Positions 38,225 to 54,460 of a DNA stretch of 64,000 nt are shown piece by piece; position 1 is the stretch's first letter, and each line of letters starts with the position of its first letter. The stretch is from positions 124,001 to 188,000 of the IMG/VR virus record IMGVR_UViG_3300023174_000036. One strand, given 5' to 3'. A program made the position numbers and the translations under genes. The notes beneath the pieces were generated by a model. It had not been told where the DNA came from, did not search any database, and was given only the letters and a program-made list of their open reading frames with translations.

Positions 38225-39861
38225 TGTAGGCCTTCCTCTAACCCTGTTTTTTTCCTTGCCCAGTCTATGCCAGGTTGTATAGTGTCCAAGGCCTTATCAA
38301 CCCCTTTACCTATGGCTTTGTATGTATCTGGTAAAAATTCTTTTAATATCAAAGCCGCACCATTGAATCCTGCAGAAATTAAAGCTGAAATTAACAAAGC
38401 CAATTTTGACAAATTACCTGTTAAGCCTTTATAAAATGCATCTGCATGTACTTTAAGTGCGGCGCTTACTGCTTCAGCAGCCTTTGTGGGATTTAATTTT
38501 ACTAATTCCCAATAAGGTTTACCCCAGATTTTTACCATACTTTGAATGCCACGAGCTATTCTAATAATCCATCTAACAAATATTGCACCAGCTCCTGCAT
38601 ATCCAACCACTGCAGAACCACCTGCGGTAAATGGAGCCATAATAGTTCCCACAAGTACAAACCCAGCCGCAATGCCTAAATCTATTCCAAGATCTTTAAA
38701 GCTGTATACTCCGGGTATAATTTCGTCTTCCCAAGACAAAGTGCCTTCGTTCCATATGGCATTAGGGATAGTTGTTACTATATTTTTCTCTTTCCATGTA
38801 CGGCGATCAACTCTGCCAGATTTAGTATCATCTGGATCTCCGTATTTGCTTTGTAAATACGCATCCACATCAAAGTCATCATCGTCTTTTTTAGATTTTG
38901 TATCTTTGGGTTTGTCATACTTAGACGACAAATTCAAATCAGCTTCAGCTTCTAGCAATGAGTAAGGATGATTTTTTCTATAACCAAAACTTTCAATCAG
39001 TTCTGCAATTGAAGTTTTTTTTTGATAACCAAAACTTTCAACTAGTGAAGCGGCTAGGTTAGATTCTTTAACAACACCGGGCACTGCTATTTGTTTTGCG
39101 TTGTCCCATGTAGCTCCAGCATTTGGCGCCACAGTTTGCCCGCCCGTGGCTTTTGTGCCACCCCATGTGGGATCAAATGCATGTGCATTGGCATCATCGC
39201 TATCGTCCATGGGGTCTCTAGTTGAAGTAACTTTTGCGGCCTGATCTTTTTTAGCACCAGTGTTGATATCTTCTTTAAGTTTGAGATACTGATCAACCAA
39301 GCCTTCCAGTTGAGTCATTTTTGCTTCTTCATCTGCTGATGAAACTTTAGCGGCTTGTGCCGCATCAACTGGCGCTGTTGTATTAGCCGCCACATCTGCT
39401 GATTGTTTTTTAACAGCATCAAATTCTTTTTGTGCTCCACCGCTGGATAACCAGTTGGTTAATCCTGCTGGGCCCTTTGCATTTGCAGGGATTAATCCCT
39501 TAGCGGCTAGCGGCTTCCAATCATCTGGACTTGGTGGAACGACCCGAGGATTTTCTCCAGGGTGCATTTCGCTATTAGAACTCCACGTTCTATTTCCGTA
39601 GGCCACAACAAAATCGCCTTCGCTGTTGAATAAGCCTTCAAAATTGTTTTGCTGTGCCAGTTTAGCTAACGCAATGTTACCAGCAACACGAGGATCCCAT
39701 GTGGTAAATCCAGTCCAACCGCCTTTGGCTTTTTCAGCAACAGCTTTGTCCATTGCGGCTTTTTCTACAGCGGCAATGCTTTGCAAGGTAAGAGAACCTT
39801 CTGCTTCATTGATATGATCTAATTTATTAATGAGTTCTCTAAAGTTCATTTCTTTTTCCAA
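38221..39861 (-). CDS. probable internal head/ejection protein with hydrophobic hairpins
   Basis: MNFRELINKLDHINEAE; VKES, LVES, LIES, LLEAE; C-terminal hydrophobic segments. Confidence 0.55.
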   Translation of the reverse strand: MEKEMNFRELINKLDHINEAEGSLTLQSIAAVEKAAMDKAVAEKAKGGWTGFTTWDPRVAGNIALAKLAQQNNFEGLFNSEGDFVVAYGNRTWSSNSEMHPGENPRVVPPSPDDWKPLAAKGLIPANAKGPAGLTNWLSSGGAQKEFDAVKKQSADVAANTTAPVDAAQAAKVSSADEEAKMTQLEGLVDQYLKLKEDINTGAKKDQAAKVTSTRDPMDDSDDANAHAFDPTWGGTKATGGQTVAPNAGATWDNAKQIAVPGVVKESNLAASLVESFGYQKKTSIAELIESFGYRKNHPYSLLEAEADLNLSSKYDKPKDTKSKKDDDDFDVDAYLQSKYGDPDDTKSGRVDRRTWKEKNIVTTIPNAIWNEGTLSWEDEIIPGVYSFKDLGIDLGIAAGFVLVGTIMAPFTAGGSAVVGYAGAGAIFVRWIIRIARGIQSMVKIWGKPYWELVKLNPTKAAEAVSAALKVHADAFYKGLTGNLSKLALLISALISAGFNGAALILKEFLPDTYKAIGKGVDKALDTIQPGIDWARKKTGLEEGLQ

Positions 39862-41236: not shown

Positions 41237-42148
41237 TTAACCTTTTAATACTCTGCTGGTTATATCTTTAATGCGAGTTAATTCTGAATTTTCTTTTAAA
41301 CTTCTAAACTGTGCAGTACCGCCGGGCATTATTGGCCCGCCATGCAAGTTGTCGCGTTCTTGTCCTGCTTTGTTGTACCACTTACCATCTTGACCTTTTG
41401 TCAGTGGTTCTCCAGTTTGATAATCTTTAGGAACAAATGGCGCAGATGGAGCAGGTTCTGGCTCGCGTTGTCTAGGTTCGCGGACATTCCATCCTGCGGC
41501 TTTCATTGCGGCAAGTGTTTGCTTTCCTGGCATTCCGGCAGTTGCTTTGCCATTTTCAATCTTGATATGTGAACCAAACCCAATGGTATGGATATTGTCT
41601 GTTAATTCAAGCCAATATATTTTACCTTGTGTATCAAATACAGTAGGATAATTCTGCCCATCATAGTTAGTTGTTGTTAAAGTAAATCCATTTCCTAAAT
41701 CCTGATCAGCACCTTCTTCTAAACCAATAGCACCTTTAATTTTATCTACTATGCTTGGCTTTTGCATACTTGGCGGTAAGCAATTGTTTGGTAATGTCTT
41801 AACAACACTTGGATTTCTCGCCATCCATTCTTTAGCAGGTAACACAGGAATGTAATTTCCTTTAGAATCTAACGGTGCTCCGTTTCCGGCACCAGGTTCC
41901 CCAGCCATAGCTTCTGCACTGCGAAGATTTTCAATACGCCATTTAATTTGATTTCTTTCCCACGGCTCACGGGCACGTGATAACAAATCATTAAGTTGCC
42001 TAAATTGTGGATTTTTATTGTTATAGTCTTTATCAGCTTGATCAGCTTCTGCACGATCGTCCCCAGGCCATCCAGGCTGACCATTTAGCTCAGATAATCG
42101 AGTATTATACTCAAAAATAAATCCTGGTTCAACATCAGTTATACGCAT
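41237..42148 (-). CDS. probable internal head protein
   Basis: MRITDV, LEEG, terminal LKENSELTRIKDIT. Confidence 0.55.
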   Translation of the reverse strand: MRITDVEPGFIFEYNTRLSELNGQPGWPGDDRAEADQADKDYNNKNPQFRQLNDLLSRAREPWERNQIKWRIENLRSAEAMAGEPGAGNGAPLDSKGNYIPVLPAKEWMARNPSVVKTLPNNCLPPSMQKPSIVDKIKGAIGLEEGADQDLGNGFTLTTTNYDGQNYPTVFDTQGKIYWLELTDNIHTIGFGSHIKIENGKATAGMPGKQTLAAMKAAGWNVREPRQREPEPAPSAPFVPKDYQTGEPLTKGQDGKWYNKAGQERDNLHGGPIMPGGTAQFRSLKENSELTRIKDITSRVLKG

Positions 42149-42152
42149 ACTA

Positions 42153-43958
42153 TTAACCGTTCAAACGTGTCAAGAATTGTTTCATGCGATCTAAGTCCGC
42201 TGATTCTTTAACAGGGTATGTTTTTCCATCCACTTTGAATTCAGTCTTGCCAGCTTTTCTAGCCGCGTCTAATTCTCCTGAAAATTCGTTACCCTCATCA
42301 GCCACATCATTGCCTTTGGTAGGTTTGTCTTTTTTCTGAACAGCTGATTTTTCGGCAATGTATGCTTGTGTTTCTTTAATGTTCTTCCACATAGCGGCAG
42401 CGGCAATCTTTTCACCTTTCTCACCACCACCAGCAGCCTTGGCCACTTTGTCAAAACTCTTACCTGGCTTGCCAATGTCTTTGCCTGCTTTAGCATCTTT
42501 AACTACAGCTGACTTCTTAGCCTTGCTTAGACCTGCACTTGGTTTGGCGGCCTCTGGTAAATTTGGACGAGGATGAGTGCCTTGTGCTGATTTGATACTG
42601 CCTTTTAAACTACTGACGTGATTTCTACTTGGCATGCCTTTGCGTTTGCCGTGTGTGTTCATCGAACCAGCACCGCCGCGGCCGTATCCTTTGACTAGTG
42701 GATCATTGTGGTCAAATTCGCCACCGCCCTTTAGATTCTTTTCGCCCGGATAGTCATCTGGTTTTGGACCATTGTAATAATCATCATCATGATAATCATA
42801 CTGGTCATAATCACGCGGCTCTTGAGTATACAATTTGTCTTTGTGTTTAGGATCACGCCACTTGGCAGCTTCTTTAACTGTCTTGCCGCCTTTTTCATCT
42901 TTACCAAGACGTCCGGCAATAACATCACCGCGTGTTACTTTGTCGTATGGTTTGGCATTGTTGGCCAAGTTGCCATCGCCTTTCTTTTTAGCTTCGTAAA
43001 CGCCTGTGCCATAAGTTTCGTCAACTTCTTTGGCTTTCTTTGGTTTAGCAGGAGCACCATCTCTGTTGTCAAACTTCTCGCTGTCCTTCATGCCCCAAGT
43101 CTTGGCACTCTTTGGACTTTGCTTTTGTGCTGGAGCTCGCTTTGCTTTCTCTTCAGCTGATTGTGCTTTGGCATGACTTGCTTTGCCTTTGCCTGATTTA
43201 GCCATCGAATCCAGCTCGTCGCCGTCATCTTTGTAGCTGGTATTTTTATGAATTACACCTGTGTCAGTTTTAGTTAATTCGCCAGTGGCTGTTTTCTTTG
43301 TGGAACCCACTTTGGCATTTGCATCAAAATCTTCGTCCACTTCTTCGTCGTCTGGAATACCATTGTGGTTACGGTCAAGACGTTTGCTGGCAGCATGGAA
43401 CGCTTTGGCTTGACGATTGTATTTTTCAACTTTTGATTTAACATGATCTGGAATTGCTTTAGGCTCTTCGTAAACCATTCCACTGCCGCCACATTCTGTA
43501 CATTCACGATGTCCACCACTCAAAATACCTTCGGCAATTTTGTCGTCGGCATCGGCTTTGATTTTTTCTGCGTGTACTTTCTTAAGCTCTTTAACTTTAG
43601 ATTTAGCCTCCATCAGGCGATTATTAATAATACGCTTTTGGCTTTCGGTATAAACTTCGCTGTCTTCAAGAGCTTTGCCATACTGGCTAAACTTCATTTC
43701 ATATTCAAGATAATGGTAAACGGATGCAATATAGTCAGCGGCTTTGGTAATCTTGGCTTGCACCCAGGCTTCCATCTGATCTTCATCATTAATCTGTTTA
43801 AACAGCTTGTGTGAATAGTTTGCAATCTTGTATAAATCAGCTTTGGCCATTGCACCTTCGCGATCGGACTGTCCGGGCTGTAATCCAATTACATTTTCCG
43901 CGTCTTGCGACATGATTTCTGGCTCTGCTGGTCCCATTGGGTTCATTTGATCTGACAT
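42153..43958 (-). CDS. probable internal head protein, Lys/Asp-rich
   Basis: Late promoter at 43983..43989; IAEG, VDED, VDET, VKEA, LPEA, terminal VKESADLDRMK. Confidence 0.6.
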   Translation of the reverse strand: MSDQMNPMGPAEPEIMSQDAENVIGLQPGQSDREGAMAKADLYKIANYSHKLFKQINDEDQMEAWVQAKITKAADYIASVYHYLEYEMKFSQYGKALEDSEVYTESQKRIINNRLMEAKSKVKELKKVHAEKIKADADDKIAEGILSGGHRECTECGGSGMVYEEPKAIPDHVKSKVEKYNRQAKAFHAASKRLDRNHNGIPDDEEVDEDFDANAKVGSTKKTATGELTKTDTGVIHKNTSYKDDGDELDSMAKSGKGKASHAKAQSAEEKAKRAPAQKQSPKSAKTWGMKDSEKFDNRDGAPAKPKKAKEVDETYGTGVYEAKKKGDGNLANNAKPYDKVTRGDVIAGRLGKDEKGGKTVKEAAKWRDPKHKDKLYTQEPRDYDQYDYHDDDYYNGPKPDDYPGEKNLKGGGEFDHNDPLVKGYGRGGAGSMNTHGKRKGMPSRNHVSSLKGSIKSAQGTHPRPNLPEAAKPSAGLSKAKKSAVVKDAKAGKDIGKPGKSFDKVAKAAGGGEKGEKIAAAAMWKNIKETQAYIAEKSAVQKKDKPTKGNDVADEGNEFSGELDAARKAGKTEFKVDGKTYPVKESADLDRMKQFLTRLNG

Positions 43959-43985
43959 ATTTGTAACTCCGTTAACTTGTAATAT

Positions 43986-44588
43986 TTATCTTTTGACGCT
44001 GCCGCCGCCCAATAGGTTGGCACCCTTCATATCAAGGGCATTTTTAGCAGTACCATCTTTGTTCTTAGGCTGTTTTACTGGTTTGTTCTTGTATACTGCA
44101 CCAACGCCCACATTGGCCGCAGTAGTCATGTTTCCAGGTGCGCTGGCGAATTCTTTTAGGGTTTCACTGACCGGAGCGCCAGTTTCGTGTACTGAAGCTT
44201 TTTTACCTTTGTTTTGCAAACTTCTAGCCACAGCTTCTGCGTGTGATTTGCTACCAAACACCTTCCAAGTTTTACCATCTATTGCAACTGCGTAATTGTT
44301 AGTTTCATGGCCTAATTCGTGTTCCATCTCACGACGTTTGAATTCACGTTTTTCGCGATCCCCAAATCCAGTACGATTGTCATCGTAGTTACGATAGCTT
44401 TCAGCCACACTTTCCTTCTTGGCAGTTTTGGCCGCATCTTTCCATGCTTGTGCTGTGGGCGCTTTAGGACTATCAGCATCTCTACTAGTGCCTGCTTTTT
44501 TACGTTTGTTCACATAGTAGTATAGTCCTTTCTTTTCACTTTCTACTATATCTTTTTTAACACTTTCATCTAATTCATGCATTTTCAT
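43986..44588 (-). CDS. probable internal head protein
   Basis: MKMHELDES, IVES, VAES, VSET, LKE. Confidence 0.55.
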   Translation of the reverse strand: MKMHELDESVKKDIVESEKKGLYYYVNKRKKAGTSRDADSPKAPTAQAWKDAAKTAKKESVAESYRNYDDNRTGFGDREKREFKRREMEHELGHETNNYAVAIDGKTWKVFGSKSHAEAVARSLQNKGKKASVHETGAPVSETLKEFASAPGNMTTAANVGVGAVYKNKPVKQPKNKDGTAKNALDMKGANLLGGGSVKR

Positions 44589-44896
44589 AATTTTTTCTCC
44601 CCAGTCATGTATGGTAAACTAAACCATAATTTGAACCATTCAGGAGTTCCTGGTTTAATATTGTTTTTGCGCTGTATCTCACCGTTGTTATCGCCGGTTA
44701 CACTGATGTTGCTGCCTAAGCTAGCACGATACTCGTGTAGTCTTGCTTCACCACCTAGACCACCTAGACCAGCCAGTGCTTTTAATTCGTGTATAGGATC
44801 ATTGGGATCGAGATAACAATCGTCATCTGCACTTTGATTCAAATCCTGTGTAGTGATCCTATATTGTTTCATTTTAAACTTGCTCTTAACATCCAA
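44585..44896 (-). CDS. hypothetical protein
   Basis: Ends PGTPEWFKLWFSLPYMTG. Confidence 0.6.
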   Translation of the reverse strand: MDVKSKFKMKQYRITTQDLNQSADDDCYLDPNDPIHELKALAGLGGLGGEARLHEYRASLGSNISVTGDNNGEIQRKNNIKPGTPEWFKLWFSLPYMTGEKKL

Positions 44897-45306
44897 CTGT
44901 GTTTCTTATGCGCATCCTGACGATCTGCAAAGAAGTTACTTAGTCCGTGATCACCAGCATCTTCGGCCATGGCAAACACTATCTTGAACATGTTGGCCAT
45001 TTTATCACTATCAGCTAACAGTTCGCGTAACATACTTTGAAAATCTGGAACTGAGTTCTCATCTTCAATCTTGCTCAGCATACTAAATTTGCTGTAACTA
45101 GCAGGCGCATAAATTTGCAAAGCACGTAGTTCTTCTGCAAATTTATCAACTACTCCATACACTTCGTCATATATTCTTTCAAACAACAAATGATGCTGAT
45201 AAAACAACGGCCCTTCGGTATTCCAGTGAAAGTTTTGCGCCTTTAATGCAAATGAATATTCGCTGGCAAATGCTGTTTTTAATGCTAAATGATATTTTTC
45301 GTCCAC
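44869..45306 (-). CDS. dps: Dps/ferritin-like DNA-protection protein
   Basis: KAQNFHWNTEG..FY..H.LFE.IY....D.FAE.LR, HKKHSWML. Confidence 0.9.
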   Translation of the reverse strand: MDEKYHLALKTAFASEYSFALKAQNFHWNTEGPLFYQHHLLFERIYDEVYGVVDKFAEELRALQIYAPASYSKFSMLSKIEDENSVPDFQSMLRELLADSDKMANMFKIVFAMAEDAGDHGLSNFFADRQDAHKKHSWMLRASLK

Positions 45307-45307
45307 T

Positions 45308-46411
45308 TTAAACTCCGTATTTGTTTCGTTTAGGTTTTGCTACAGGACTGACTTTATGAGTAGAATCCAATTCTCGACTCTTCATATCGCCTTTATTTGT
45401 ATCCTTGTAACTAGCACCAACAACCTTATATGCTTGTTTAAGCATGTCTTGTTCTTCTTGTGTATAAGGATGAGTTGTTTTTTGTTTACCAATCCAGCTC
45501 TTGGCCTTCATCTCAATAGGGTCTTTGCCGTTAGCACCAGCCACGGCCATGCCTAATCGATATGCGGTGTAATCACCGCTAACATGCTCGCTATCACCGT
45601 AAGTATTAACACCTCTAGTGGGCTGTTGTTGTCGCTTGGTCATTTTAGCCTGCGATGACTCTAGCATTGCAGTCATTTCTCTAATTTGTTCTGCTAGTTG
45701 AAATGCACGAAGATTTTTCTTTGGTGTATTCTTGTTTACGTCAACTGTGGTGTTTTGTTTTGTAATAATACCAACACCTGCGGCATCTTCTTTGGCTTTA
45801 ACTGCTTTTTTAACTTTTTCTGGATACTGATTTAAATAATATGCAACCACATCAAATATAGGTTTTGCTTCACCATCAACTTCGACGGTCACACTAGGAT
45901 CAATGCCCATGTCTTTATAGAACGCATTACGGTCACCGGTTCTTACAGCCTTACGCAAATCCGTTGCACTTGCCAATCGTTCTGTTGCAACATGCTCAAT
46001 ATTTTTAAATTTATACATACCATGTTCGCTTTCAGCGCCATTGTATTTGACCAATACGTCAGCTAACCATGTTTCATCGGTATATACTTTCAAATGTACA
46101 TTTTCACCATACTTGTCGTAAACACTGGTGGCTAATGTTAGCAAACTTTGTTCAGGAACAACATGACCTGCAACTGGCGGAAATACTGCGGCCATGCATT
46201 GTAATTTAACATCATAGGGTAATGGATCTTTAGGGCCGCTAGTGCTGTCGTTAGTTCCTACATACCAAATTGGATTTTTGCTGGCTGCTTTCCATACACC
46301 TTTGTGACCTTTGTGCGGAGGATTAAAGCGTCCAAATGAAATCCCAATAGTCTTTATACTATTAGTTGGTTGCTCACCTTCAAACATTTCTCTTAACTTC
46401 ATGGTACCCAC
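45308..46411 (-). CDS. cytidyltransferase-like (HIGH) domain fused to head-protein-like C-terminal domain
   Basis: SFGRFNPPHKGH, DPL, ASAT.LR. Confidence 0.7.
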   Translation of the reverse strand: MGTMKLREMFEGEQPTNSIKTIGISFGRFNPPHKGHKGVWKAASKNPIWYVGTNDSTSGPKDPLPYDVKLQCMAAVFPPVAGHVVPEQSLLTLATSVYDKYGENVHLKVYTDETWLADVLVKYNGAESEHGMYKFKNIEHVATERLASATDLRKAVRTGDRNAFYKDMGIDPSVTVEVDGEAKPIFDVVAYYLNQYPEKVKKAVKAKEDAAGVGIITKQNTTVDVNKNTPKKNLRAFQLAEQIREMTAMLESSQAKMTKRQQQPTRGVNTYGDSEHVSGDYTAYRLGMAVAGANGKDPIEMKAKSWIGKQKTTHPYTQEEQDMLKQAYKVVGASYKDTNKGDMKSRELDSTHKVSPVAKPKRNKYGV

Positions 46412-47613
46412 CTTGATAATGTTTCCCCGCTACCGTGTTGAACGTTATCTCGTGGAACAAATTTAGTATGCATATCACCTGCTGAATCGTACTGTACCCA
46501 TCCTTCTGAATTGATAACTTTAATTTCTGGAGGATTCATTTCTAATTGCGATAACAGTTGATTTTTCAAATTCATAATTCGCTTAACATAATTAAACACA
46601 GTAGTAACGCCAGCCGGAACAGCATCTATACGGGATCTAATATTCAACTTCATGCTGTCGGATTTGACCATACCACTTGCACCTGTATCAACCCAAGTTA
46701 TAAAATCATCACCAACATTGGCCAACTGTCCTGATTTGGATTTTTCATTCATGTAACGATATATAATACCTTTGAAGTTTGATACTTTTGGAATAGGTGA
46801 CAAGAACGCATCAATAGTTGCTTTATCTTGTTTGAGATCCATTTCAATTTTATCAATAACTTTGGTATCCATTTTTGGTTGTACTTTGGCATAGTATGGA
46901 CTCAATACAATTAACTCAGGTATTGGATTCATATATGTAGTAAAATCTCTAACTGGTTTTTGTTCACTATCACCAGCACCAAATTTATCAAAGCTACCGT
47001 GTGCGGCAACCATGGCCTGTGCACCTTCCGCAATACGCTGACCCAGTGTAGAGTCGACAGCAATGTGATATTGTGTTTGACTTTTTAAATTAGGATTTAA
47101 TTCATACACACCATCCACTTCTTCTGGGGGTGTTGTAAATAGACCATCGGCATAAAAATAAATTTCTTTACCTTTACGTGGAACTTTGGTAGAAGCTTTG
47201 AAAATCTCATACAAGTGACTAAACTCTGTGGCAAACTGTTGGCGCTCTGCTTGTTTGGCAGGATCGTTGCCAGCATCACCGCTTTTGTTCAAAATAAAAT
47301 TATAAATGCCACGCACACTGGTAAAATCGCTTATATCGCTAGTGCCTGTTCCACCGCGACTCCAACCGTTGTGACCGCATAAGATAAACTGTCCGTCTTT
47401 AGTGTAGCCCCAATAAATTTGCGGTGCTCCGTCCCATTTAAATCTGGTATTTTCTGAACTAGCAGTTCCAGCTTTACGTATATGCTCAAGAGCTTTGATT
47501 ACACCAGCAGTGCCGTGTAAAAAAGTCAAATCTTCTACGTGGTTAAATGCTCTGCCAACTTTTGCTTTGACAGGTTCAACAGCCTCACGTATAAACAATT
47601 CTCTTAGTAACAC
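46399..47613 (-). CDS. conserved phage protein with ligase-like KxDG motif (DUF6267-like)
   Basis: NHVEDL, FKWDGAPQIYWG, YADGLF, terminal EGWV...KFVPR. Confidence 0.55.
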   Translation of the reverse strand: MLLRELFIREAVEPVKAKVGRAFNHVEDLTFLHGTAGVIKALEHIRKAGTASSENTRFKWDGAPQIYWGYTKDGQFILCGHNGWSRGGTGTSDISDFTSVRGIYNFILNKSGDAGNDPAKQAERQQFATEFSHLYEIFKASTKVPRKGKEIYFYADGLFTTPPEEVDGVYELNPNLKSQTQYHIAVDSTLGQRIAEGAQAMVAAHGSFDKFGAGDSEQKPVRDFTTYMNPIPELIVLSPYYAKVQPKMDTKVIDKIEMDLKQDKATIDAFLSPIPKVSNFKGIIYRYMNEKSKSGQLANVGDDFITWVDTGASGMVKSDSMKLNIRSRIDAVPAGVTTVFNYVKRIMNLKNQLLSQLEMNPPEIKVINSEGWVQYDSAGDMHTKFVPRDNVQHGSGETLSRWVP

Positions 47614-47615
47614 AA

Positions 47616-48008
47616 TTAGTCCTTGTACTTGCCATCAGCTAGATGTTGTTTAAAGTCTTCTTGCATTTTTTTGCAAATACTAGTAACAGTTTTGTCGTCT
47701 AACGATTCAGGCAGTTCACGTATAGGGAATCGTTTAACATATTGCTGATAGCTACTTACAACTGCTGGCTTAAAAACATCAGGATTTATTGAACGATTGC
47801 TGTTGGCCCTATCAAGGCAGCGGGCAATGCTGGGATAAACATGACGTCGATACACATCATCGTCATGATTCATGAAATGAGTCAAGTCTTCTACAAGGTC
47901 ATAGTCCAGTTCTCTACCCTTTTCAGTAGATTTAACAAAATCTAAATCTTTAAAGAATTTATTTTCTAATAGTTCACGTATACGCATTATAAAGCCCGGT
48001 TTTAACAA
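47616..48008 (-). CDS. hypothetical late protein
   Basis: MRIRELLE; late promoter ATAAATA at 48046..48052. Confidence 0.6.
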   Translation of the reverse strand: MLKPGFIMRIRELLENKFFKDLDFVKSTEKGRELDYDLVEDLTHFMNHDDDVYRRHVYPSIARCLDRANSNRSINPDVFKPAVVSSYQQYVKRFPIRELPESLDDKTVTSICKKMQEDFKQHLADGKYKD

Positions 48009-48071: not shown

Positions 48072-48719
48072 TTAGGCTTTCTCGTTTACGACCCGCTCAA
48101 CTTTGGAAATTACGCCGCTAAGATGCATCTTTGCCATGAGCAAATTATTATCACCTGTAATGTAAAAGTAACTGCCGCCCCAGCTATTGTTTCTTAACAG
48201 CTGAATTTTACAAGATTTAGTTAGTTTTATCTTGGAATTATTACTAGCCCATGTGATAAAAGTGCTGTATTCTTGCGAAGTTTTGCCCAGTGTTACCCTG
48301 TAATCGTATTTTATCTTGGGCAAAATAACTGTGTTTTCTTCTAGAGTTGTGCCGGTTGCCGGCTTGCAAATATACTTTACTCGAGATGCATCCAATTTGA
48401 TTAATTTGTCAACATCTTGTTTGTTATTAGTATACACTGTGACCCATGGAGTTTCTACACGTATTTCTATGTTGTCTAACGCAGAAAGCACATGCTCTAA
48501 CTTGATAGCATATTGCAACTCTTCTTCAGTTTTGATAGTCCAACGTTTTCTAGAATACACATCAGTTTCTAATTTTACATTTTTTATGCGGTCAGCAATA
48601 ACATCGCTGGGTGCGTTTCTAAATAAATGAGCGCCAGAAAATACCAATACAATTTTGTACTGGTACTTTCCGTAAAACAGTTTTTTAGTCTGCTTGAACT
48701 GCATGGTCAGTAGTTTCAA
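48072..48719 (-). CDS. hypothetical protein
   Basis: 215 aa ORF overlapping clpA end. Confidence 0.6.
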   Translation of the reverse strand: MKLLTMQFKQTKKLFYGKYQYKIVLVFSGAHLFRNAPSDVIADRIKNVKLETDVYSRKRWTIKTEEELQYAIKLEHVLSALDNIEIRVETPWVTVYTNNKQDVDKLIKLDASRVKYICKPATGTTLEENTVILPKIKYDYRVTLGKTSQEYSTFITWASNNSKIKLTKSCKIQLLRNNSWGGSYFYITGDNNLLMAKMHLSGVISKVERVVNEKA

Positions 48720-50961
48720 TTGCCAACATTGGCGCTTTAGATGTTTTACCTTTAGCTACCAATGCTATTTTATCTTCACTAATAGAGATAGTAAGCCACC
48801 CGCCGTTCTTGAGGTCTCCAAACAACATCATGCGAGCAAGGTCACGTTTAATTTCCTTGTCAATAACACGTTGTAATGGACGAGCACCCATTTTAGGATC
48901 AAAGCCTTTGGCAATAAGCCAGTTGGTAGCCTCGTTATTAATTTTGATACGAATACCTTTTTCTTTAACTTGATCACGCATTTCGTCAATGAACTTGGTA
49001 ACAACTTTGACCATTGTTTCTTTATTGAGTTTGTTGAATGTAATAACTGCATCAAGTCGATTTCGAAACTCTGGAGTAAAAAACTTTTTCAAGTCTTTAT
49101 CGCTGTAGTCTTTACTTTGTGATCCAAATCCAATAGTATTCTTTTCAGCATCCTGCGCACCTGCATTGGTGGTGAGAATCAATACAATGTTACGGCAATC
49201 AGCTTTTTTACCATTCGAACCAGTAATAAAACCGTTATCCATAATTTGCAACAATACTGTGCTGACATCTGGATGTGACTTTTCAACTTCGTCAAACAAC
49301 AAAACAGCATTAGGGTTTTCTTGAATCTGTGTAATCAACAAGCCAGCATTTTCTTCAAAGCCAACATACCCTGGTGGACTACCAATCAGTTTGGAGATGC
49401 TATGCTTCTCTTGGTATTCTGACATGTCAAACCGCAACAGTTTGACACCCAAGTGCTTGGCCAGCGACTTGGCAGTTTCGGTCTTACCGCAACCAGTTGG
49501 CCCCATGAATATAAATGATCCAACAGGTTTGTTTTCACTCTTAAGTCCTGCCTGTGCAACAATGATCTTGTCCACAATTTCTTCCACAGCGGTGTCTTGT
49601 CCAAACACATCTGCGCTGACATTGTCTTGCAATTTGGAAATACTTGCACTTTCAGTTTCAGAAACTTGTTCTTCAGGAATTTGTACCATCTTAGCAAGTT
49701 CGTATTGAATTTCACGTTCGGTAATGATACGCTCGTCTGCAAGTTTGAGATTGAAACGACTACAAGCCAAGTCAATCAAATCAATGGCCTTATCTGGAAG
49801 TTTCTTATCTGTTTGATATTTTACACTTAGCTTGATTGCTGAATGTAATGCATCGTCTTTAATTTTAACATTATGGAATCCTTCATAGTATTTTTTAATA
49901 CCCTTAAGGATCTGTGTAGTAACTTCAATTGTTGGTTCATCAACAGTAATACGTTGGAAACGACGCATCAATGCACGATCCTTTTCAAAGTGCTTGCGAT
50001 ATTCTTCCCATGTTGTACTAGCAACAACTTTGATATTGCCTTTGCTCAATGCAGGTTTCATCATGTTGGCAAGGTCGTTTGCACTGTTACCAGCAGATCC
50101 TGCACCAGAGATCATGTGTGCTTCGTCGATAAACAACACAGTCTTGCCTTTCTTTTGAAGAGCTTTGATAACTGCTTTAAATCTTTCTTCAAAGTCTCCG
50201 CGATATTTAGATCCAGCTAGCATAGCTGAGATATCTAAATTATAAACAGTGTAGTCTTTTAAGAAGTCTGGAACAGCACCCTTGACAATATTGTAGGCTA
50301 GTCCTTCTGCTATGGCAGTCTTACCTACACCCGGATCTCCAACTAAGATAACATTATTTTTATTACGACGACCCATTGCAAGTGCAATATTTTCCAGTTC
50401 GTCAACACGACCAATAACTGGGTCAATTTTATTTTTTTCTACTTGAGCATTTAAGTTTGTAGTAAACGCCTGCAGAGCTTTACTTGGTTGACCGCCTTCT
50501 TGAGGTTGTTCTTCCTCTTCAGGATCATCCACGCTGTTATTCAAGAAGTCAGCAAACTTGTCTCTATCAATGCCAGCTTTTGCAATATAAAAATATGCCC
50601 AACTGCGTTTTTCACCCATCATTGCAACAAACACATCAGTGGGCTCAATGCGCTGGCGTCCGTTGAACAACACTTGTGTAAACGCACGATTCAACACACG
50701 CTCCACGCTTTGTGTTTTCTTAGGCTTGACCACAACATCTTGCACAGTGATTTCACCGCATTTGTTTTTCAAATAATCAGTTAATTCTGATTTCATTGTT
50801 TCAGGCTTGGAACCAAAACTTTGTAAACAACTAACAAACGATTCTTCAGTCAGCATAGCTAGAAAGATATGTTCGATTGTTAAATATTCATGATGCAGTT
50901 TTTTAGCAGTCTCTAATGCTTTTTCAAATACTGCCTGCAAATTATCACTTGGTTCTACCAT
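48685..50961 (-). CDS. clpA: ATP-dependent Clp protease ATP-binding subunit
   Basis: N-domain HEYLTIEH, GDPGVGKT, FIDEAH, RRFQ, GPTGCGKT, FDMSEY, LLFDEVEK, GARPL. Confidence 0.93.
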   Translation of the reverse strand: MVEPSDNLQAVFEKALETAKKLHHEYLTIEHIFLAMLTEESFVSCLQSFGSKPETMKSELTDYLKNKCGEITVQDVVVKPKKTQSVERVLNRAFTQVLFNGRQRIEPTDVFVAMMGEKRSWAYFYIAKAGIDRDKFADFLNNSVDDPEEEEQPQEGGQPSKALQAFTTNLNAQVEKNKIDPVIGRVDELENIALAMGRRNKNNVILVGDPGVGKTAIAEGLAYNIVKGAVPDFLKDYTVYNLDISAMLAGSKYRGDFEERFKAVIKALQKKGKTVLFIDEAHMISGAGSAGNSANDLANMMKPALSKGNIKVVASTTWEEYRKHFEKDRALMRRFQRITVDEPTIEVTTQILKGIKKYYEGFHNVKIKDDALHSAIKLSVKYQTDKKLPDKAIDLIDLACSRFNLKLADERIITEREIQYELAKMVQIPEEQVSETESASISKLQDNVSADVFGQDTAVEEIVDKIIVAQAGLKSENKPVGSFIFMGPTGCGKTETAKSLAKHLGVKLLRFDMSEYQEKHSISKLIGSPPGYVGFEENAGLLITQIQENPNAVLLFDEVEKSHPDVSTVLLQIMDNGFITGSNGKKADCRNIVLILTTNAGAQDAEKNTIGFGSQSKDYSDKDLKKFFTPEFRNRLDAVITFNKLNKETMVKVVTKFIDEMRDQVKEKGIRIKINNEATNWLIAKGFDPKMGARPLQRVIDKEIKRDLARMMLFGDLKNGGWLTISISEDKIALVAKGKTSKAPMLAIETTDHAVQAD

Positions 50962-51448
50962 TTAATTTCCTCTGTTTTTTAATTGCCATTGCTAGTTTAA
51001 GTGGACTTAGTCCATCTGTAAAACATACGCCATCCAAATGATCTAGTTCGTGTAAGAAACATCTGGCATCTAGACCCTCTAATTGTATTATACGCTCTTG
51101 GCCTGTATTGTCAAGGTATTTTGCAATCAAACTTGTACTGCGTTCAACTTTTAACCATAAATCCGGAAAACTCAAACATCCTTCGTCTCCTATGGCTTTT
51201 TCATTATTTACTTCAAGGATAATGGGATTAAACAGCCCACACTCTCGACCATCCTGAGTACGCATGACAAATACACGTTTCAACAATCCAACTTGTTGTG
51301 CGGCAAGTCCTATACCGTTTGATATCTTCATTAAACTAAGCATCTCTTGCTCGACACGTGCCGCTTGTTCACAATCTTCTGCACTTTCAAATTGCCAAGG
51401 CGTTGCTGATTGTTTTAATATTGGATTAGGATGTTTTATTAATTTCAT
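50945..51448 (-). CDS. def: peptide deformylase
   Basis: [23 protein letters not shown]. Confidence 0.95.
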
Positions 51449-52277
51449 TGTTAATTGAGCGAAGTCTTTCTACTAACGAAGGATCTGTAACGGCCGGAGT
51501 TCGGATTTTAATAACAGATACAAAACGACCTTTGTGCCCAGTGTTTACATTTGGAAATCCATTACCGTGACTGGCAAATTCTGAACCGTCTTCAATACCA
51601 GCACGTAAATCAAGATCCAATGCTTGTCCTGACAATGTTTTTACTTGTTTTCTACAACCAACCATAGCGTCAATGGGACTAATGTACACTTTTGTGTAAA
51701 TGTCATCGCCCACACGGGTAAAGTTAGCATCGGGCAATATCACAATAGTAACATTTAAATTACCACGGGGTGCATTTGGAATACTGTCGTCACCAAGTCC
51801 TTGATATCTGATAGTTTCAGCATGTCCAATACCAGGCGGCACATTAATAACAACAGTTTGTGTACGTCCACTAGGCAATTTATAATTTGCTTCTAGTTGT
51901 TTGCCTACAAACGAATCCATTAACGTAATTTGACATTGGATATTTAAATCTCTATTTCGGCCACGGCCACCGTGTCTGCCAAAAATATCTCCAAACGGAT
52001 GTCCAGCAAATGGATTGTTTTGCCCAAATGCTTGTTCAAACGGATCCCAACCACCAGTATGAAAACGTACTTGTGGGCCACCCATTCTTTGTTGGTCGTA
52101 TTCAGCACGTTTATTTTGATCACTTAGTGTGTCGTATGCCACACTAATATCTTTAAACTTGGCTTGATCACCGCCTTTGTCCGGGTGATGCTTATTGGCC
52201 AAACTTCTGTAGGCTTTTTTAATTTCTTCAGGAGTTGCTTGTTCATTAACTCCAAGGGTTTGATAATAATCAGTCAT
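51426..52277 (-). CDS. DnaJ/CbpA-like co-chaperone (no Zn finger)
   Basis: [16 protein letters not shown]-domain, G/F linker, C-terminal DnaJ domains; late promoter at 52297..52303. Confidence 0.9.
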
Positions 52278-53256: not shown

Positions 53257-53814
53257 TTATAAAACAGGATCTGGATCCTGAGGTACTATTTTCTTACCAC
53301 CAGCTGTTGTTGTTACTCCTGTTGGAGTTGTCCCCCAACTTGGTGCTGGTGTAAAACTTGTTGTTGGCGCTGAAGGTATGCTTCCAAACCCGCCTCCGCC
53401 AAAGCCACTTGGCGCTGGTTGGTTGAACCCTGTTGGTGCTGGAGTACTGAAGCCCCCAGGCGAGGCACCAAATCCTGTTTGAGGTGAGCCAAATGTTGTT
53501 GTGACGCTCTGTGATACGGGTGCAAGTCCACCATTATTTGCTCCGCCTAATTTTTCTTGTGTACGACCAAATGCCGCAATACCTAAAACAGCACCCATTG
53601 CAATGTGGAATAAACCAGCACCTTGTAGTGTTAGCGGATTCCACTGTGTGATTTGTGTGTGGGTCATTGTTTGTAACAGACTCCATAAGATTGGAAATAC
53701 CACCATGTCCATAGTACAAACCAACATGTACATCCAACCCATCATTGGACGCCATTTGCTGTTCATCCAATCTTCTTTCTTTTGCTCGCTTGCGCTTTTG
53801 ACTTCTTCTGACAT
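53257..53814 (-). CDS. probable holin with low-complexity C-terminal tail
   Basis: KWRPMMGW then hydrophobic segments and MGAVLGIAAFGRTQEK, like 3TM holins; inside lysis cluster. Confidence 0.65.
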   Translation of the reverse strand: MSEEVKSASEQKKEDWMNSKWRPMMGWMYMLVCTMDMVVFPILWSLLQTMTHTQITQWNPLTLQGAGLFHIAMGAVLGIAAFGRTQEKLGGANNGGLAPVSQSVTTTFGSPQTGFGASPGGFSTPAPTGFNQPAPSGFGGGGFGSIPSAPTTSFTPAPSWGTTPTGVTTTAGGKKIVPQDPDPVL

Positions 53815-53838
53815 TTAGTTCGCTCCTAAATTATACTA

Positions 53839-54459: not shown

Positions 54460-54460
54460 G

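What the first reader, a model, noticed from the sequence alone, without database searches (positions are those of the whole stretch)
45308..47613. Coupled HIGH nucleotidyltransferase and KxDG ligase-like genes, both with head-targeting N-termini
46399..47613 has KWDG, matching motif I of covalent nucleotidyltransferases (ligases, capping enzymes), plus later EG.V...K motifs. It overlaps a cytidyltransferase-like FGRFNPPHKGH protein fused to a head-protein domain. Both begin (M)xLRE(L/M)F. Inference: an injected two-enzyme nucleotide-transfer module, for example RNA repair, NAD-related or anti-defence chemistry, with no characterised function that I know of.
Basis: partly seen in the sequence, partly recalled or inferred. 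Interest (0 to 1): 0.62.

Follow-up and report, generated by a model that had tools for sequence, protein, structure and literature searches.

The report
Capsid-tagged ligase-like and NMNAT-like enzyme pair
A giant T4-like phage carries two coupled genes, one for an uncharacterised enzyme with the fold and catalytic motifs of a nucleic-acid ligase and one for an NAD-synthesis-type adenylyltransferase; the pair is conserved across marine T4-like phages, and here both carry a short N-terminal tag resembling the signal phage T4 uses to load proteins into its head.

Summary
On the minus strand, 46399..47613 encodes a 404-aa DUF6267 protein and 45308..46402 a 364-aa HIGH-motif nucleotidyltransferase. 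The two genes are joined by an ATGA stop/start overlap.

- **DUF6267 protein.** The AlphaFold model (pLDDT 87) matches almost only polynucleotide ligases (Z 7.7 down to 5.0). K59-x-D-G, E370-G and K384/R388 are invariant down to 15% identity.
- **Partner enzyme.** It is closest to NadM/archaeal NMN adenylyltransferases (Z 13.1) and keeps the HxGH and SATxLR motifs.
- **Not a one-off.** DUF6267 and "cytitidyltransferase" sit side by side in at least 233 cyanomyovirus records. The four marine T4-like genomes I tested lack a canonical DNA ligase. Fused DUF6267–cytidylyltransferase proteins exist.
- **The N-terminal tag.** MxLRE(L/M)F-type tags are specific to this jumbo-phage lineage. They resemble the N-termini of T4 IPII/IPIII and Alt and contain (L/I)xE protease sites. 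Related tags mark a small gene beside the prohead protease and two cell-wall hydrolases. A cyanophage homologue of the transferase with a similar tag was found in virions by mass spectrometry.

Packaging of this pair, Lys-adenylylation and the substrate are all untested. The "head-protein domain" fusion is not supported. This phage also has an ordinary ATP-dependent DNA ligase. I rate it a new variant of a known kind, of moderate to high interest.

The parts
46399..47613 (-). Gene A: 404-aa DUF6267 protein, a divergent ligase-type (lysine-AMP) nucleotidyltransferase
   Evidence: Pfam DUF6267 E 1.1e-13. AF2 model pLDDT 87. VIA-align gives NgrRnl 5cot Z 7.7, REL1 7.4, T4 Rnl2 7.2, Trl1 6.5, T4 DNA ligase 6.3, and 26 of the top 28 rows are ligases.
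47584..47613 (-). N-terminal tag of gene A, (M)LLRELFIRE; contains LRE and IRE, which fit the (L/I)xE pattern
   Evidence: Residues 1-20 have pLDDT below 50. The extension is absent from cyanophage orthologues.
47428..47439 (-). Motif I, K59-W-D-G: the predicted AMP-accepting lysine, in a loop between two beta strands
   Evidence: Invariant in alignments A1 and A3. Strands 56-58 and 65-70 flank it in the model.
47530..47547 (-). Family-invariant N-terminal motif F-N-H-x-E-D (H25, E27, D28), function unknown
46543..46881 (-). Helical insertion (about residues 245-357) between the front and back halves of the nucleotidyltransferase domain; absent in roughly 295-aa family members
   Evidence: Secondary structure. 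S-SCSM1 ORF257 and S-RIM8 gp183 lack it.
46450..46506 (-). Motif IV-like E370-G and motif V-like K384-x-V-x-R388
   Evidence: Invariant across the family; coordinates verified.
46399..46402 (-). ATGA overlap: stop codon of gene A and start codon of gene B (translational coupling)
45308..46402 (-). Gene B: 364-aa protein with a HIGH-motif adenylyltransferase domain (NMNAT-like) and a C-terminal domain of unknown function
   Evidence: PHROG 3041/395 'cytidyltransferase' E 1e-14. JGI names close homologues NMN adenylyltransferase. Fold matches.
46373..46402 (-). N-terminal tag of gene B, MKLREMFEGE
   Evidence: The family consensus is MKLRELFEN.
45818..46360 (-). Nucleotidyltransferase domain (residues 15-195), with HKGH at 46304..46315 and SATDLR at 45953..45970
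   Evidence: pLDDT about 90. NadM 2qjo and archaeal NMNAT 1m8f at Z 13.1; PPAT at 11.2-12.0. Motifs invariant in A2.
45311..45817 (-). C-terminal half of gene B: a variable linker (including a GVGIITKQNTT... cassette found in only some homologues) and a conserved ~90-aa tail domain ending KPKRNKYGV; no known family
   Evidence: Low pLDDT. No Pfam or PHROG hit. A paralogous 127-aa gene lies at genome 334320..334703.
47616..47987 (-). Upstream 123-aa gene with the same kind of tag (MRIRELLENK); function unknown; conserved in synteny
44869..45306 (-). Dps/ferritin-like gene immediately downstream; it has no tag, and the adjacency is conserved in related jumbo phages
   Evidence: Pfam Ferritin E 3.9e-20; synteny; N-terminus.
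38221..39849 (-). 542-aa gene of unknown function further down the block, with a related tag (MNFRELINKL...INE)

Best explanation
Gene A is a divergent member of the covalent (lysine-AMP) nucleotidyltransferase superfamily, closest in shape to nick-sealing RNA ligases of the Rnl2/Rnl5/REL1 kind. It has a helical insertion and no OB domain. It most likely self-adenylylates on Lys59 and joins or repairs broken nucleic-acid ends. Gene B is a NadM/archaeal-type NMN-adenylyltransferase-like enzyme.

The two act as one module. They are translationally coupled here, adjacent in hundreds of marine T4-like phages, and fused into one polypeptide in some viruses. The most economical functional link is that the transferase makes or regenerates the ligase's adenylyl donor (NMN + ATP -> NAD+), or otherwise keeps NAD+ available.

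In this jumbo-phage lineage both proteins, and the 123-aa neighbour, have gained a short N-terminal propeptide of the T4 capsid-targeting type. They are therefore probably loaded into the prohead core, trimmed by the T4-type prohead protease at (L/I)xE, and ejected with the DNA, so they would act at the very start of infection.

What is shown: folds, motifs, coupling, conserved pairing, fusion, tag distribution. What is inferred: catalysis, substrate, the NAD link, packaging and ejection.
For: **Ligase fold.** 26 of the top 28 VIA-align rows are RNA or DNA ligases: Z 7.7 over 189 aa at rmsd 4.0 for 5cot, then 7.4 for 1xdn, 7.2 for 2hvq, 6.5 for 6n0t and 6.3 for 6dt1. Capping enzymes score 4.1-4.8. 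Foldseek's weak top hits are also ligases.

**Conserved residues.** H25, E27, D28, K59, D61, G62, Y182, H205, E370, G371, K384 and R388 are invariant in an alignment reaching 15% identity.

**Gene B.** GRFNPPHxGH and SATxLR are invariant. NadM and archaeal NMNATs score Z 13.1-12.6, PPAT 12.0-11.2. Foldseek E is 4e-5.

**Coupling and pairing.**
- ATGA overlap between the genes.
- Same order in related jumbo-phage contigs.
- Adjacent in S-H9-2, P-HM1 and S-RIM8, and one gene apart in Melnitz.
- The gene junction is conserved in 233 cyanophage records.

**Fusion.** The 764-position phrog_455 profile is DUF6267 at positions 17-342 followed by the transferase at 343-721. An ESM Atlas viral cluster with a 760-aa representative carries both PF19782 and PF01467.

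**The tag.**
- T4 IPII/IPIII begin MKTYQEFIAEA and Alt begins MELITELFDED. In T4 the first 10 residues of IPIII suffice for packaging and are removed by gp21 (PMC9026906).
- This genome has a T4-type prohead protease and gp23.
- A 79-aa MILRELFY gene lies between the portal gene and the core/protease genes.
- MRAKEFL/MRAKDFI tags sit on an M23 peptidase and a GH19-like protein, while the GH19 gene beside the holin is untagged.
- S-SCSM1 NMNAT is a homologue of gene B (hhalign E 1.7e-12), begins MKSFLQFLKEAAE, and is annotated as a virion protein from mass spectrometry (PMC9602691). S-CREM2 cytidylyltransferase is also reported in virions (PMC10665884).
Against: - The ligase Z-scores (under 8) lie in the range the tool warns can be a common arrangement. 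No sequence or profile method links DUF6267 to a named ligase family.
- The acidic residue of ligase motif III is not conserved.
- I could not superimpose K59 on a catalytic lysine residue by residue.
- There is no direct evidence that this pair is in virions. In S-SCSM1 the untagged, non-adjacent DUF6267 orthologue is not annotated as a virion protein.
- The authors of the virion proteomes caution that abundant soluble proteins may co-purify with virions.
- The transferase scores far below curated NMNAT thresholds (15.8 vs 341 bits), and PPAT fits nearly as well, so the substrate is open.
- The complex prediction gave no verdict.
- The phage already has a canonical ATP-dependent DNA ligase, so gene A is not needed for replication here.
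Confidence: 0.5

Rival explanations
1. The pair is a replication/repair enzyme set that works only inside the infected cell. DUF6267 is the DNA ligase that T4-like cyanophages otherwise lack, helped by the NMNAT-like enzyme. The N-terminal motif in the jumbo-phage lineage would then be something other than a packaging signal, for example a stability, chaperone or ClpA-recognition tag, given the neighbouring ClpA/DnaJ/deformylase genes.
For: In cyanophages and Melnitz the pair sits in the replication block between the gp41 helicase/MazG and the primase, near UvsX and the DNA polymerase. S-SCSM1, P-HM1, S-H9-2 and Melnitz have DUF6267 but no PF01068 or PF01653 ligase domain. Published comparisons list gp30 as a non-cyanophage core gene (PMC5349666; PMC2993671). 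In the window the pair lies between ClpA/DnaJ/PDF and DNA polymerase B.
Against: This phage has its own canonical ligase. The tag resembles the T4 capsid-targeting sequence and the Alt N-terminus, and also marks a gene in the head module and cell-wall hydrolases. A tagged homologue of gene B is found in virions. The best fold matches are RNA ligases rather than DNA ligases, and there is no OB domain.
Confidence: 0.25
2. The pair is an injected counter-defence module with two separate jobs. The ligase-like enzyme would re-join host-cleaved tRNA or other RNA (as T4 Rnl1 does with Pnk). The NMNAT-like enzyme would rebuild NAD+ depleted by NADase defence systems.
For: The closest folds are RNA ligases, including the tRNA ligase Trl1, T4 Rnl1 and T4 Rnl2. 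Gene B has an NMNAT-like fold. Delivery with the DNA would suit early counter-defence. Authors of cyanophage papers propose an NAD role for the transferase.
Against: No Nampt/NAPRTase-family enzyme is present to complete an NMN-based salvage route. I did not look for an end-healing kinase/phosphatase partner. Tight coupling and natural fusion of the two domains point to one shared job rather than two independent ones. In cyanophages the pair is a near-core gene set in the replication block, which is unusual for accessory counter-defence genes.
Confidence: 0.2
3. The pair is part of an oxidative-damage protection set for the phage genome. The ligase would seal single-strand breaks, working with the adjacent Dps-like DNA-protecting ferritin.
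For: A Dps/ferritin gene directly follows gene B, here and in related phages. A viral cluster fuses DUF6267 to a Cu/Zn superoxide dismutase domain. The family is concentrated in phages of phototrophs.
Against: The argument is purely associative. Dps carries no tag. The Dps adjacency is not seen in the cyanophage loci I examined. The SOD fusion was seen only as a cluster label, and I did not inspect its sequences.
Confidence: 0.12
4. Gene A is a non-catalytic internal head protein that merely keeps a ligase-like shape.
For: No sequence method places it in a ligase family. Motif III is degenerate. T4 Rnl1 also has a non-enzymatic assembly role (my own knowledge, not tested here).
Against: The lysine, aspartate and glycine of motif I, the EG of motif IV and the K/R of motif V are invariant across 15-19% identity, including untagged cyanophage members. 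That pattern is the signature of a maintained active site.
Confidence: 0.05

Closest known systems
Nick-sealing RNA ligases of the Rnl2/Rnl5/REL1 group (T4 Rnl2 2hvq/1s68, Naegleria NgrRnl 5cot, T. brucei REL1 1xdn)
   Same: These are the best structural matches to gene A (Z 7.7-7.1, 172-191 aligned residues). Shared features are a KxDG-type motif I in a strand-loop-strand, EG and K..(K/R) motifs near the C-terminal end of the domain, and no OB fold.
   Different: No detectable sequence similarity, and no hit to Pfam RNA_ligase in the genome. Gene A has a ~110-aa helical insertion inside the domain instead of a separate N- or C-terminal domain. The motif III acidic residue is not conserved. 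An invariant N-terminal H-x-E-D motif has no assigned role.
ATP-dependent DNA ligases (T4 gp30 6dt1, T7 1a0i, Chlorella virus 2q2t)
   Same: The nucleotidyltransferase fold (Z 6.3-5.6). In cyanophages the family's genomic position in the replication block would suit a gp30 substitute.
   Different: No OB domain and no PF01068 match. This phage has a separate true PF01068 ligase at genome 223765..224331.
NadM / archaeal NMN adenylyltransferases (2qjo, 1m8f, 1f9a), and phage NMNATs used for NAD+ reconstitution together with Nampt
   Same: Fold (Z 13.1-12.6 over ~145-150 residues, rmsd 2.5-2.8). The GRFxPxHxGH and SxTxxR signatures. JGI and the cyanophage authors name homologues NMNAT.
   Different: Only 15-19% identity. 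Scores lie far below the curated NMNAT model cut-offs. PPAT fits almost as well. Gene B has an extra C-terminal domain of unknown function. There is no Nudix domain and no Nampt in the genome.
T4 capsid-targeting-sequence proteins (IPI, IPII, IPIII) and Alt
   Same: A short N-terminal peptide shared by otherwise unrelated proteins. It is hydrophobic and acidic in pattern with (L/I)xE sites, as in Alt's MELITELFDE compared with MLLRELFIRE here. The genome has a T4-type prohead protease and gp23. Enzymes delivered with the DNA are a known theme, since Alt is an ADP-ribosyltransferase.
   Different: The cargo is unrelated to the IPs or Alt. Packaging and cleavage have not been shown for any protein of this phage. 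The tag consensus (M-x-x-R/K-E/D-L/F-F/L) differs from that of T4.
Cyanomyovirus gene pair T4-GC 71 (hypothetical protein) and T4-GC 190 ('cytitidyltransferase')
   Same: These are the orthologous families: Pfam DUF6267 E 6e-137 for PHM1_161, and phrog_3041/395 for the transferase. Same gene order and overlapping ends.
   Different: The cyanophage versions lack the N-terminal tag on DUF6267. Their transferase is often only ~185 aa, with the C-terminal parts encoded by separate genes. They share only 15-19% identity with gene A.

Membership tests
Covalent nucleotidyltransferase superfamily (polynucleotide ligases / capping enzymes) | Motif I KxDG with the nucleotide-accepting lysine | tested here: met
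   K59-W-D-G is invariant in 29 close and 10 distant family members. It lies in a loop between two strands in the model.
Covalent nucleotidyltransferase superfamily (polynucleotide ligases / capping enzymes) | Nucleotidyltransferase-domain fold | tested here: met
   26 of the top 28 VIA-align rows are ligases, Z 7.7-5.0, with 150-200 aligned residues. Each Z on its own is moderate. The case rests on the top of the list being nearly all ligases.
Covalent nucleotidyltransferase superfamily (polynucleotide ligases / capping enzymes) | Motifs III, IIIa, IV and V in order | tested here: inconclusive
   A motif IV-like E370-G and a motif V-like K384..R388 are invariant. The candidate motif III (YADG here) is not conserved in cyanophage members. 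Motif IIIa is not assigned.
Covalent nucleotidyltransferase superfamily (polynucleotide ligases / capping enzymes) | Formation of a covalent enzyme-(lysyl-N)-NMP intermediate | not testable with these tools
   Needs a label-transfer assay.
ATP-dependent DNA ligase (PF01068 type) | OB-fold domain after the nucleotidyltransferase domain, and a match to the family profile | tested here: not met
   The protein ends 16 residues after motif V, and the only extra element is a helical insert. Pfam finds only DUF6267. The PF01068 gene of this phage lies elsewhere.
Rnl2-type RNA ligase | Match to the RNA_ligase profile, and the Rnl2 C-terminal helical domain | tested here: not met
   No PF09414 match anywhere in the genome. 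The structural alignment covers only Rnl2 residues 6-233.
NMN adenylyltransferase (NadM/NadR/archaeal type) | (H/T)xGH and SxTxxR nucleotide-binding signatures on a Rossmann-like fold | tested here: met
   HKGH and SATDLR are invariant in A2. Z 13.1 to 2qjo, 1m8f and 1ej2.
NMN adenylyltransferase (NadM/NadR/archaeal type) | Score above the curated family thresholds | tested here: not met
   TIGR01526 scores 15.8 bits against a cut-off of 341. Pfam CTP_transf_like scores 15.2 against 21.
NMN adenylyltransferase (NadM/NadR/archaeal type) | Specificity for NMN or NaMN | not testable with these tools
   PPAT folds score within about 1 Z unit. An enzyme assay is needed.
Phage NAD+ reconstitution pathway of the Nampt + NMNAT type | A Nampt/NAPRTase-family partner in the same genome | tested here: not met
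   No PF04095 match at E <= 0.1 in the 356-kb record, which is estimated 96% complete.
T4-type capsid-targeted (CTS) internal or ejected proteins | A short N-terminal peptide shared by unrelated proteins of one phage, with (L/I)xE protease sites | tested here: met
   About ten genes carry M-x-x-[RK]-[ED]-[FLMI]-[FLMI] at their starts. LRE and IRE occur in gene A, and LRE in gene B.
T4-type capsid-targeted (CTS) internal or ejected proteins | T4-type prohead protease and scaffold-core assembly genes in the genome | tested here: met
   PF03420 E 6.5e-27 and PF07068 E 3.5e-82. The gene order is portal, 79-aa tagged gene, a 302-aa acidic ORF, protease, a 366-aa ORF, then MCP. The core and scaffold roles of the two unnamed ORFs are inferred from position.
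T4-type capsid-targeted (CTS) internal or ejected proteins | Presence in the virion with the N-terminus removed | not testable with these tools
   The only evidence is by proxy. The tagged NMNAT homologue of S-SCSM1 is annotated as a virion protein. The S-CREM2 cytidylyltransferase was found in virions.

The most novel reading that the evidence does not exclude
DUF6267 is the long-missing polynucleotide ligase of T4-like cyanophages and their marine relatives. It would work as a two-part, self-recharging machine: the adjacent or fused NMNAT-like enzyme regenerates the ligase's adenylyl donor (NAD+ from NMN and ATP) in place. In jumbo phages the whole module would be packed in the capsid and injected, so that nucleic-acid sealing starts before any phage gene is expressed.
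Probability: 0.2. Interest if true: 0.8.

Novelty: new variant of a known kind. Interest (0 to 1): 0.62.

Why it matters
DUF6267 is present in several hundred sequenced marine T4-like phages and hundreds of metagenomic protein clusters, yet it has no assigned function, and no paper in the searchable library mentions it.

- **A candidate for a missing enzyme.** Showing that it is a ligase-type enzyme offers a concrete, testable candidate for the DNA ligase these ecologically dominant phages appear to lack. It also gives a reason for the puzzling, conserved "cytitidyltransferase" next to it.
- **A new enzyme architecture.** A ligase coupled or fused to an NMNAT-like enzyme would be a new arrangement for nucleic-acid joining and could be useful as a reagent.
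- **A readable sorting signal.** The tag analysis suggests that capsid-delivered cargo can be read from sequence in T4-like jumbo phages. If so, the ejected-protein set of uncultured giant phages becomes predictable, and it would include nucleotide-handling enzymes as well as cell-wall hydrolases.

Tried and rejected
- **Sequence links to solved structures.** phmmer and a profile search of gene A against all PDB sequences gave nothing meaningful. hhalign of the family profile against T4 gp30 also gave nothing.
- **Isolated phage records.** blastn and tblastn of the window genes against isolated phages found no close relatives. Only a relaxed tblastn gave the first lead to cyanophages and Melnitz.
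- **Language-model look-alike search.** Uninformative.
- **Complex prediction.** The run for gene A (residues 21-404) with the gene B transferase domain (residues 14-196) returned 'no answer' with score 0.00. This is not evidence either way.
- **S-SCSM1 ORF90.** I tested whether this virion protein next to the NMNAT is a DUF6267 member. It is not. That phage's DUF6267 gene lies elsewhere and is not annotated as a virion protein.
- **Downstream proteins.** I compared the Lys-rich 601-aa protein (42153..43958), and separately the C-terminal half of gene B, with S-SCSM1 virion proteins. No similarity was found.
- **A fused gene in GenBank.** I looked for a single annotated fused gene across the DUF6267/transferase junction in cyanophage records. 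All 60 sampled records annotate two genes. Evidence for fusion therefore rests on the phrog_455 profile and the ESM Atlas cluster.
- **'Only ligase of this phage'.** Rejected, because a canonical PF01068 ligase is present.
- **Complete Nampt + NMNAT salvage pair.** Rejected, because no Nampt was found.
- **Not used.** The large representative-protein search, one remaining word search and the read-mapping tools were not needed for the claims made here.


Full report
**Setting.** The window is bases 124001-188000 of a 356,312-bp IMG/VR virus record estimated 96% complete. It is a T4-like jumbo phage.
- It has a T4-type family-B DNA polymerase (phrog_262, E 3e-198).
- It has a T4 gp23-type major capsid protein and a T4 gp21-type prohead protease.
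- The finding lies in a long minus-strand block: DnaJ, peptide deformylase, a ClpA/B-like ATPase, a 215-aa ORF, a 123-aa ORF, gene A, gene B, a Dps/ferritin-like gene, several charged proteins of unknown function, then the DNA polymerase.
- The same order occurs in related metagenomic jumbo-phage contigs of 67-223 kb.

**Observation.** Gene A (46399..47613) starts at a GTG behind an AAGGA site, and its homologues start at the same residue. Gene B most likely starts at the ATG at 46402, behind AAGGTGG. This start overlaps gene A's stop codon as ATGA, the classic arrangement for translational coupling.

The N-termini are (M)LLRELFIRE and MKLREMFEGE, and the upstream 123-aa gene begins MRIRELLENK. 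A strict version of this motif occurs at only four of 7,667 candidate starts in the whole genome, three of them these adjacent genes. The rate in shuffled genomes predicts about one hit over all starts. The three adjacent genes spell the shared residues with different codons, and the motif is kept in homologues at about 40% identity. It is therefore a selected protein feature.

**Gene A is ligase-like.**
- Pfam places it only in DUF6267 (E 1.1e-13). No paper in the searchable library mentions that family.
- Sequence and profile searches against PDB sequences find nothing.
- An AlphaFold model built on 29 homologues is confident (pLDDT 87, pTM 0.83) apart from residues 1-20, which are disordered.
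- Foldseek's weak top hits are ligases.
- The Foldseek-independent VIA-align search gives a list in which 26 of the top 28 rows are RNA or DNA ligases:

| Structure | Enzyme | Z |
|---|---|---|
| 5cot | Naegleria nick-sealing RNA ligase | 7.7 (189 aa, rmsd 4.0) |
| 1xdn | T. brucei REL1 | 7.4 |
| 2hvq | T4 Rnl2 | 7.2 |
| 6n0t | fungal tRNA ligase | 6.5 |
| 6dt1 | T4 DNA ligase | 6.3 |
| 9do4 | T4 Rnl1 | 6.0 |
| 1a0i | T7 DNA ligase | 5.9 |

- mRNA capping enzymes score 4.1-4.8. Each single Z is moderate, and the tool warns about Z below 8. What carries the argument is that the top of the list is almost entirely ligases.

The second line of evidence is conservation. An alignment that adds cyanophage, Melnitz and S-SCSM1 members (15-19% identity to gene A) leaves only 18 invariant positions. 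Among them are K59, D61 and G62 (motif I), E370-G371 (like motif IV) and K384/V386/R388 (like motif V), together with an N-terminal H25-x-E27-D28. In the model, K59 sits in a loop between strands 56-58 and 65-70, which is the usual setting of the ligase lysine.

Three differences from classical ligases are clear:
- There is no OB domain.
- A roughly 110-residue helical block (about 245-357) is inserted in the domain. Family members of about 295 aa lack it.
- The motif III acidic residue is not conserved.

I could not obtain a residue-by-residue superposition. The assignment of K59 as the nucleophile is therefore an inference from motif, position and conservation.

**Gene B is NMNAT-like.**
- Residues 15-195 are modelled with pLDDT of about 90, and the C-terminal half poorly.
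- Foldseek gives NadM, NadD and PPAT at E about 4e-5.
- VIA-align ranks NadM (2qjo) and archaeal NMNATs (1m8f, 1ej2, 1f9a) first at Z 13.1-12.7. PPAT follows at 12.0-11.2 and NadD at 11.3.
- Both signatures of this superfamily, HxGH and SxTxxR, are invariant in 25 homologues.
- JGI names close homologues NMN adenylyltransferase. Curated models are far from satisfied, with TIGR01526 at 15.8 bits against a cut-off of 341.
- The substrate is therefore open, with NMN or NaMN the leading guess.
- The C-terminal half matches no family. Its last ~90 residues have a paralogue, a 127-aa gene at genome 334320..334703.

**The pair is old and widespread.**
- Relaxed tblastn led to T4-like marine phages.
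- In Synechococcus phage S-H9-2, gp081 (DUF6267, Pfam E 1.8e-83) overlaps gp082, annotated "cytidyltransferase".
- In Prochlorococcus phage P-HM1 the pair is PHM1_161 (T4-GC 71) and PHM1_162 ("cytitidyltransferase", T4-GC 190).
- In S-RIM8 it is gp183/gp184. In Methylophilales phage Melnitz the two genes are separated by one small gene.
- DUF6267 is found in about 400 phage records. The junction between the two genes is conserved in 233 records.
- There the pair lies in the replication block, next to the gp41 helicase, MazG, UvsX and the primase.
- Two independent resources show the two domains in one chain. The 764-position phrog_455 profile is DUF6267 (positions 17-342) followed directly by the transferase (343-721). 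An ESM Atlas cluster of viral proteins, with a 760-aa representative, carries both Pfam families.
- Conserved adjacency, overlapping stop and start, and natural fusion together make a strong case that the two enzymes serve one process.
- A direct complex prediction gave no verdict, so I do not use it.

**Relation to DNA ligase.** S-SCSM1, P-HM1, S-H9-2 and Melnitz all have DUF6267 but no ATP- or NAD-dependent DNA ligase domain. This agrees with published lists in which gp30 is a non-cyanophage core gene. DUF6267 is thus a candidate for the missing ligase of these phages. The phage studied here does have a canonical PF01068 ligase at genome 223765..224331, so in this genome gene A must do something additional or different.

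**The N-terminal tag.**
- In T4, the first ten residues of IPIII suffice to load a protein into the prohead core, and gp21 then removes them. Alt likewise loses a short N-terminal propeptide (PMC9026906).
- Read from the T4 record, IPII and IPIII begin MKTYQEFIAEA, IPI begins MKTFKEFTST, and Alt begins MELITELFDED. The tags here have the same character and contain (L/I)xE sites. Compare Alt's LITELFDE with LLRELFIRE in gene A.
- Cyanophage DUF6267 proteins start directly at the H-x-E-D motif, with no such extension. The ~20-residue, disordered extension is therefore an addition in the jumbo-phage lineage.
- The fourth strict hit in the genome is a 79-aa gene (MILRELFY) between the portal gene and the ORFs next to the prohead protease. 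This is where T4 has gp67/gp68 (from my own knowledge of the T4 gene order).
- A slightly broader pattern adds a 542-aa gene in the same block (window 38221..39849). It also adds a trio at genome 333333..335350 that begin MRAKDFI, MRAKEFL and MRAKEFL.
- That trio is a GH19-like protein, the paralogue of gene B's tail domain, and an M23 peptidase with a peptidoglycan-binding domain. The GH19 gene next to the holin, the likely lysis enzyme, is untagged.
- The MRAxEFL form is also the N-terminus of many gene A homologues.
- The S-SCSM1 NMNAT is a homologue of gene B (hhalign E 1.7e-12) and begins MKSFLQFLKEAAE. It is annotated as a virion protein on the basis of mass spectrometry (PMC9602691). 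The S-CREM2 cytidylyltransferase was also detected in virions (PMC10665884).
- The authors of those studies caution that abundant soluble proteins may co-purify with virions.
- Taken together, packaging of genes A and B is a reasonable inference, which I put at about 0.55-0.6. It is not shown. In S-SCSM1 the untagged DUF6267 is not listed as a virion protein.

**Mechanism.** My best account has three parts.
1. A ligase-type enzyme self-adenylylates on Lys59 and seals nucleic-acid breaks.
2. It is functionally tied to an NMNAT-like enzyme. The simplest chemical link is donor supply: a ligase that uses NAD+ releases NMN, and the transferase would convert NMN and ATP back to NAD+.
3. In this lineage both are probably delivered with the DNA.

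The phage lacks a Nampt, which argues against a stand-alone NAD salvage pathway and mildly favours a local recycling role. Three alternatives remain open and are listed with their tests:
- a purely intracellular replication or repair role;
- two independent counter-defence jobs, RNA repair and NAD+ replenishment;
- an oxidative-damage theme, suggested by the adjacent Dps gene and by a viral DUF6267-superoxide dismutase fusion cluster.

**Novelty and verdict.** The gene pair itself has long been annotated in cyanophages, and the transferase has been discussed as an NMNAT. In the sources I could search, the following appear to be new:
- the ligase-type fold and active-site pattern of DUF6267;
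- its fusion and coupling to the transferase as a functional unit;
- the lineage-specific capsid-targeting-like tags.

I rate it a new variant of a known kind, with interest 0.62. Confidence is high for the folds and the conserved pairing, moderate for packaging, and low for the exact chemistry.

Noticed in passing
Genome 333333..335350, minus strand (outside the window; locus L026:511-2528): Three consecutive genes begin MRAKDFI, MRAKEFL and MRAKEFL. They are a GH19-like protein (328 aa), a 127-aa paralogue of the C-terminal tail of gene B, and an M23 peptidase with a peptidoglycan-binding domain (215 aa). They are likely capsid- or virion-delivered cell-wall hydrolases.
   Followed up: partly
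Genome 83446..83685, minus strand (outside the window; locus L013): A 79-aa gene beginning MILRELFY (phrog_13986, unknown function) lies between the portal gene and the ORFs next to the prohead protease. This is the position of T4 gp67/gp68.
   Followed up: partly
window 48685..52277 (-): A ClpA/B-like double AAA+ ATPase (758 aa), a peptide deformylase and a DnaJ with its C-terminal domain are encoded in a row just upstream of the finding. The arrangement is conserved in related jumbo-phage contigs. It looks like a phage-borne protein-quality-control set.
   Followed up: partly
window 44869..45306 (-): A Dps/ferritin-like gene (Pfam Ferritin E 3.9e-20) directly follows gene B with a 1-nt gap. 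The same adjacency occurs in related contigs L005 and L006.
   Followed up: partly
ESM Atlas clusters, not in the window: A cluster of 65 viral proteins (547-aa representative) fuses DUF6267 to a Cu/Zn superoxide dismutase domain. I saw this only as a cluster label and did not inspect the sequences.
   Followed up: no
window 53257..55090 (-): A likely lysis cassette: a GTA_holin_3TM-like protein (53257..53814), a hydrophobic 206-aa protein, and an untagged GH19 hydrolase (54461..55090).
   Followed up: partly
window 41237..44896 (-): A run of charged, low-complexity proteins with no family match: a Lys/Asp-rich 601-aa protein at 42153..43958, a 200-aa protein with a weak hit to phrog_22379 (the cyanophage 'possible cytitidyltransferase' tail), and a 303-aa protein. 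They could be further internal or ejected proteins, but they lack the tag.
   Followed up: partly
window 45311..45817 (-), alignment A2 columns ~265-300: A cassette, GVG(I/K)ITxQNTTxDVNxxTPxKNLRAF, is present in only some homologues of gene B and absent in others that are otherwise similar. It is a mobile-looking linker module of unknown role.
   Followed up: no
Methylophilales phage Melnitz, L007:4204-8867: Adjacent Melnitz genes begin MQGFKTFLSEAK, MKKFSELTSE and MKKFSEIIEA (the last is the 650-aa transferase). These are very close to the T4 IPIII tag MKTYQEFIAE, which suggests the same sorting logic in a cultured phage that could be tested.
   Followed up: partly
Genome 223765..224331, minus strand (outside the window; locus L009): A canonical ATP-dependent DNA ligase domain (PF01068, E 4.8e-22, in a 452-aa open frame) coexists with the DUF6267 gene in this phage.
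   Followed up: yes
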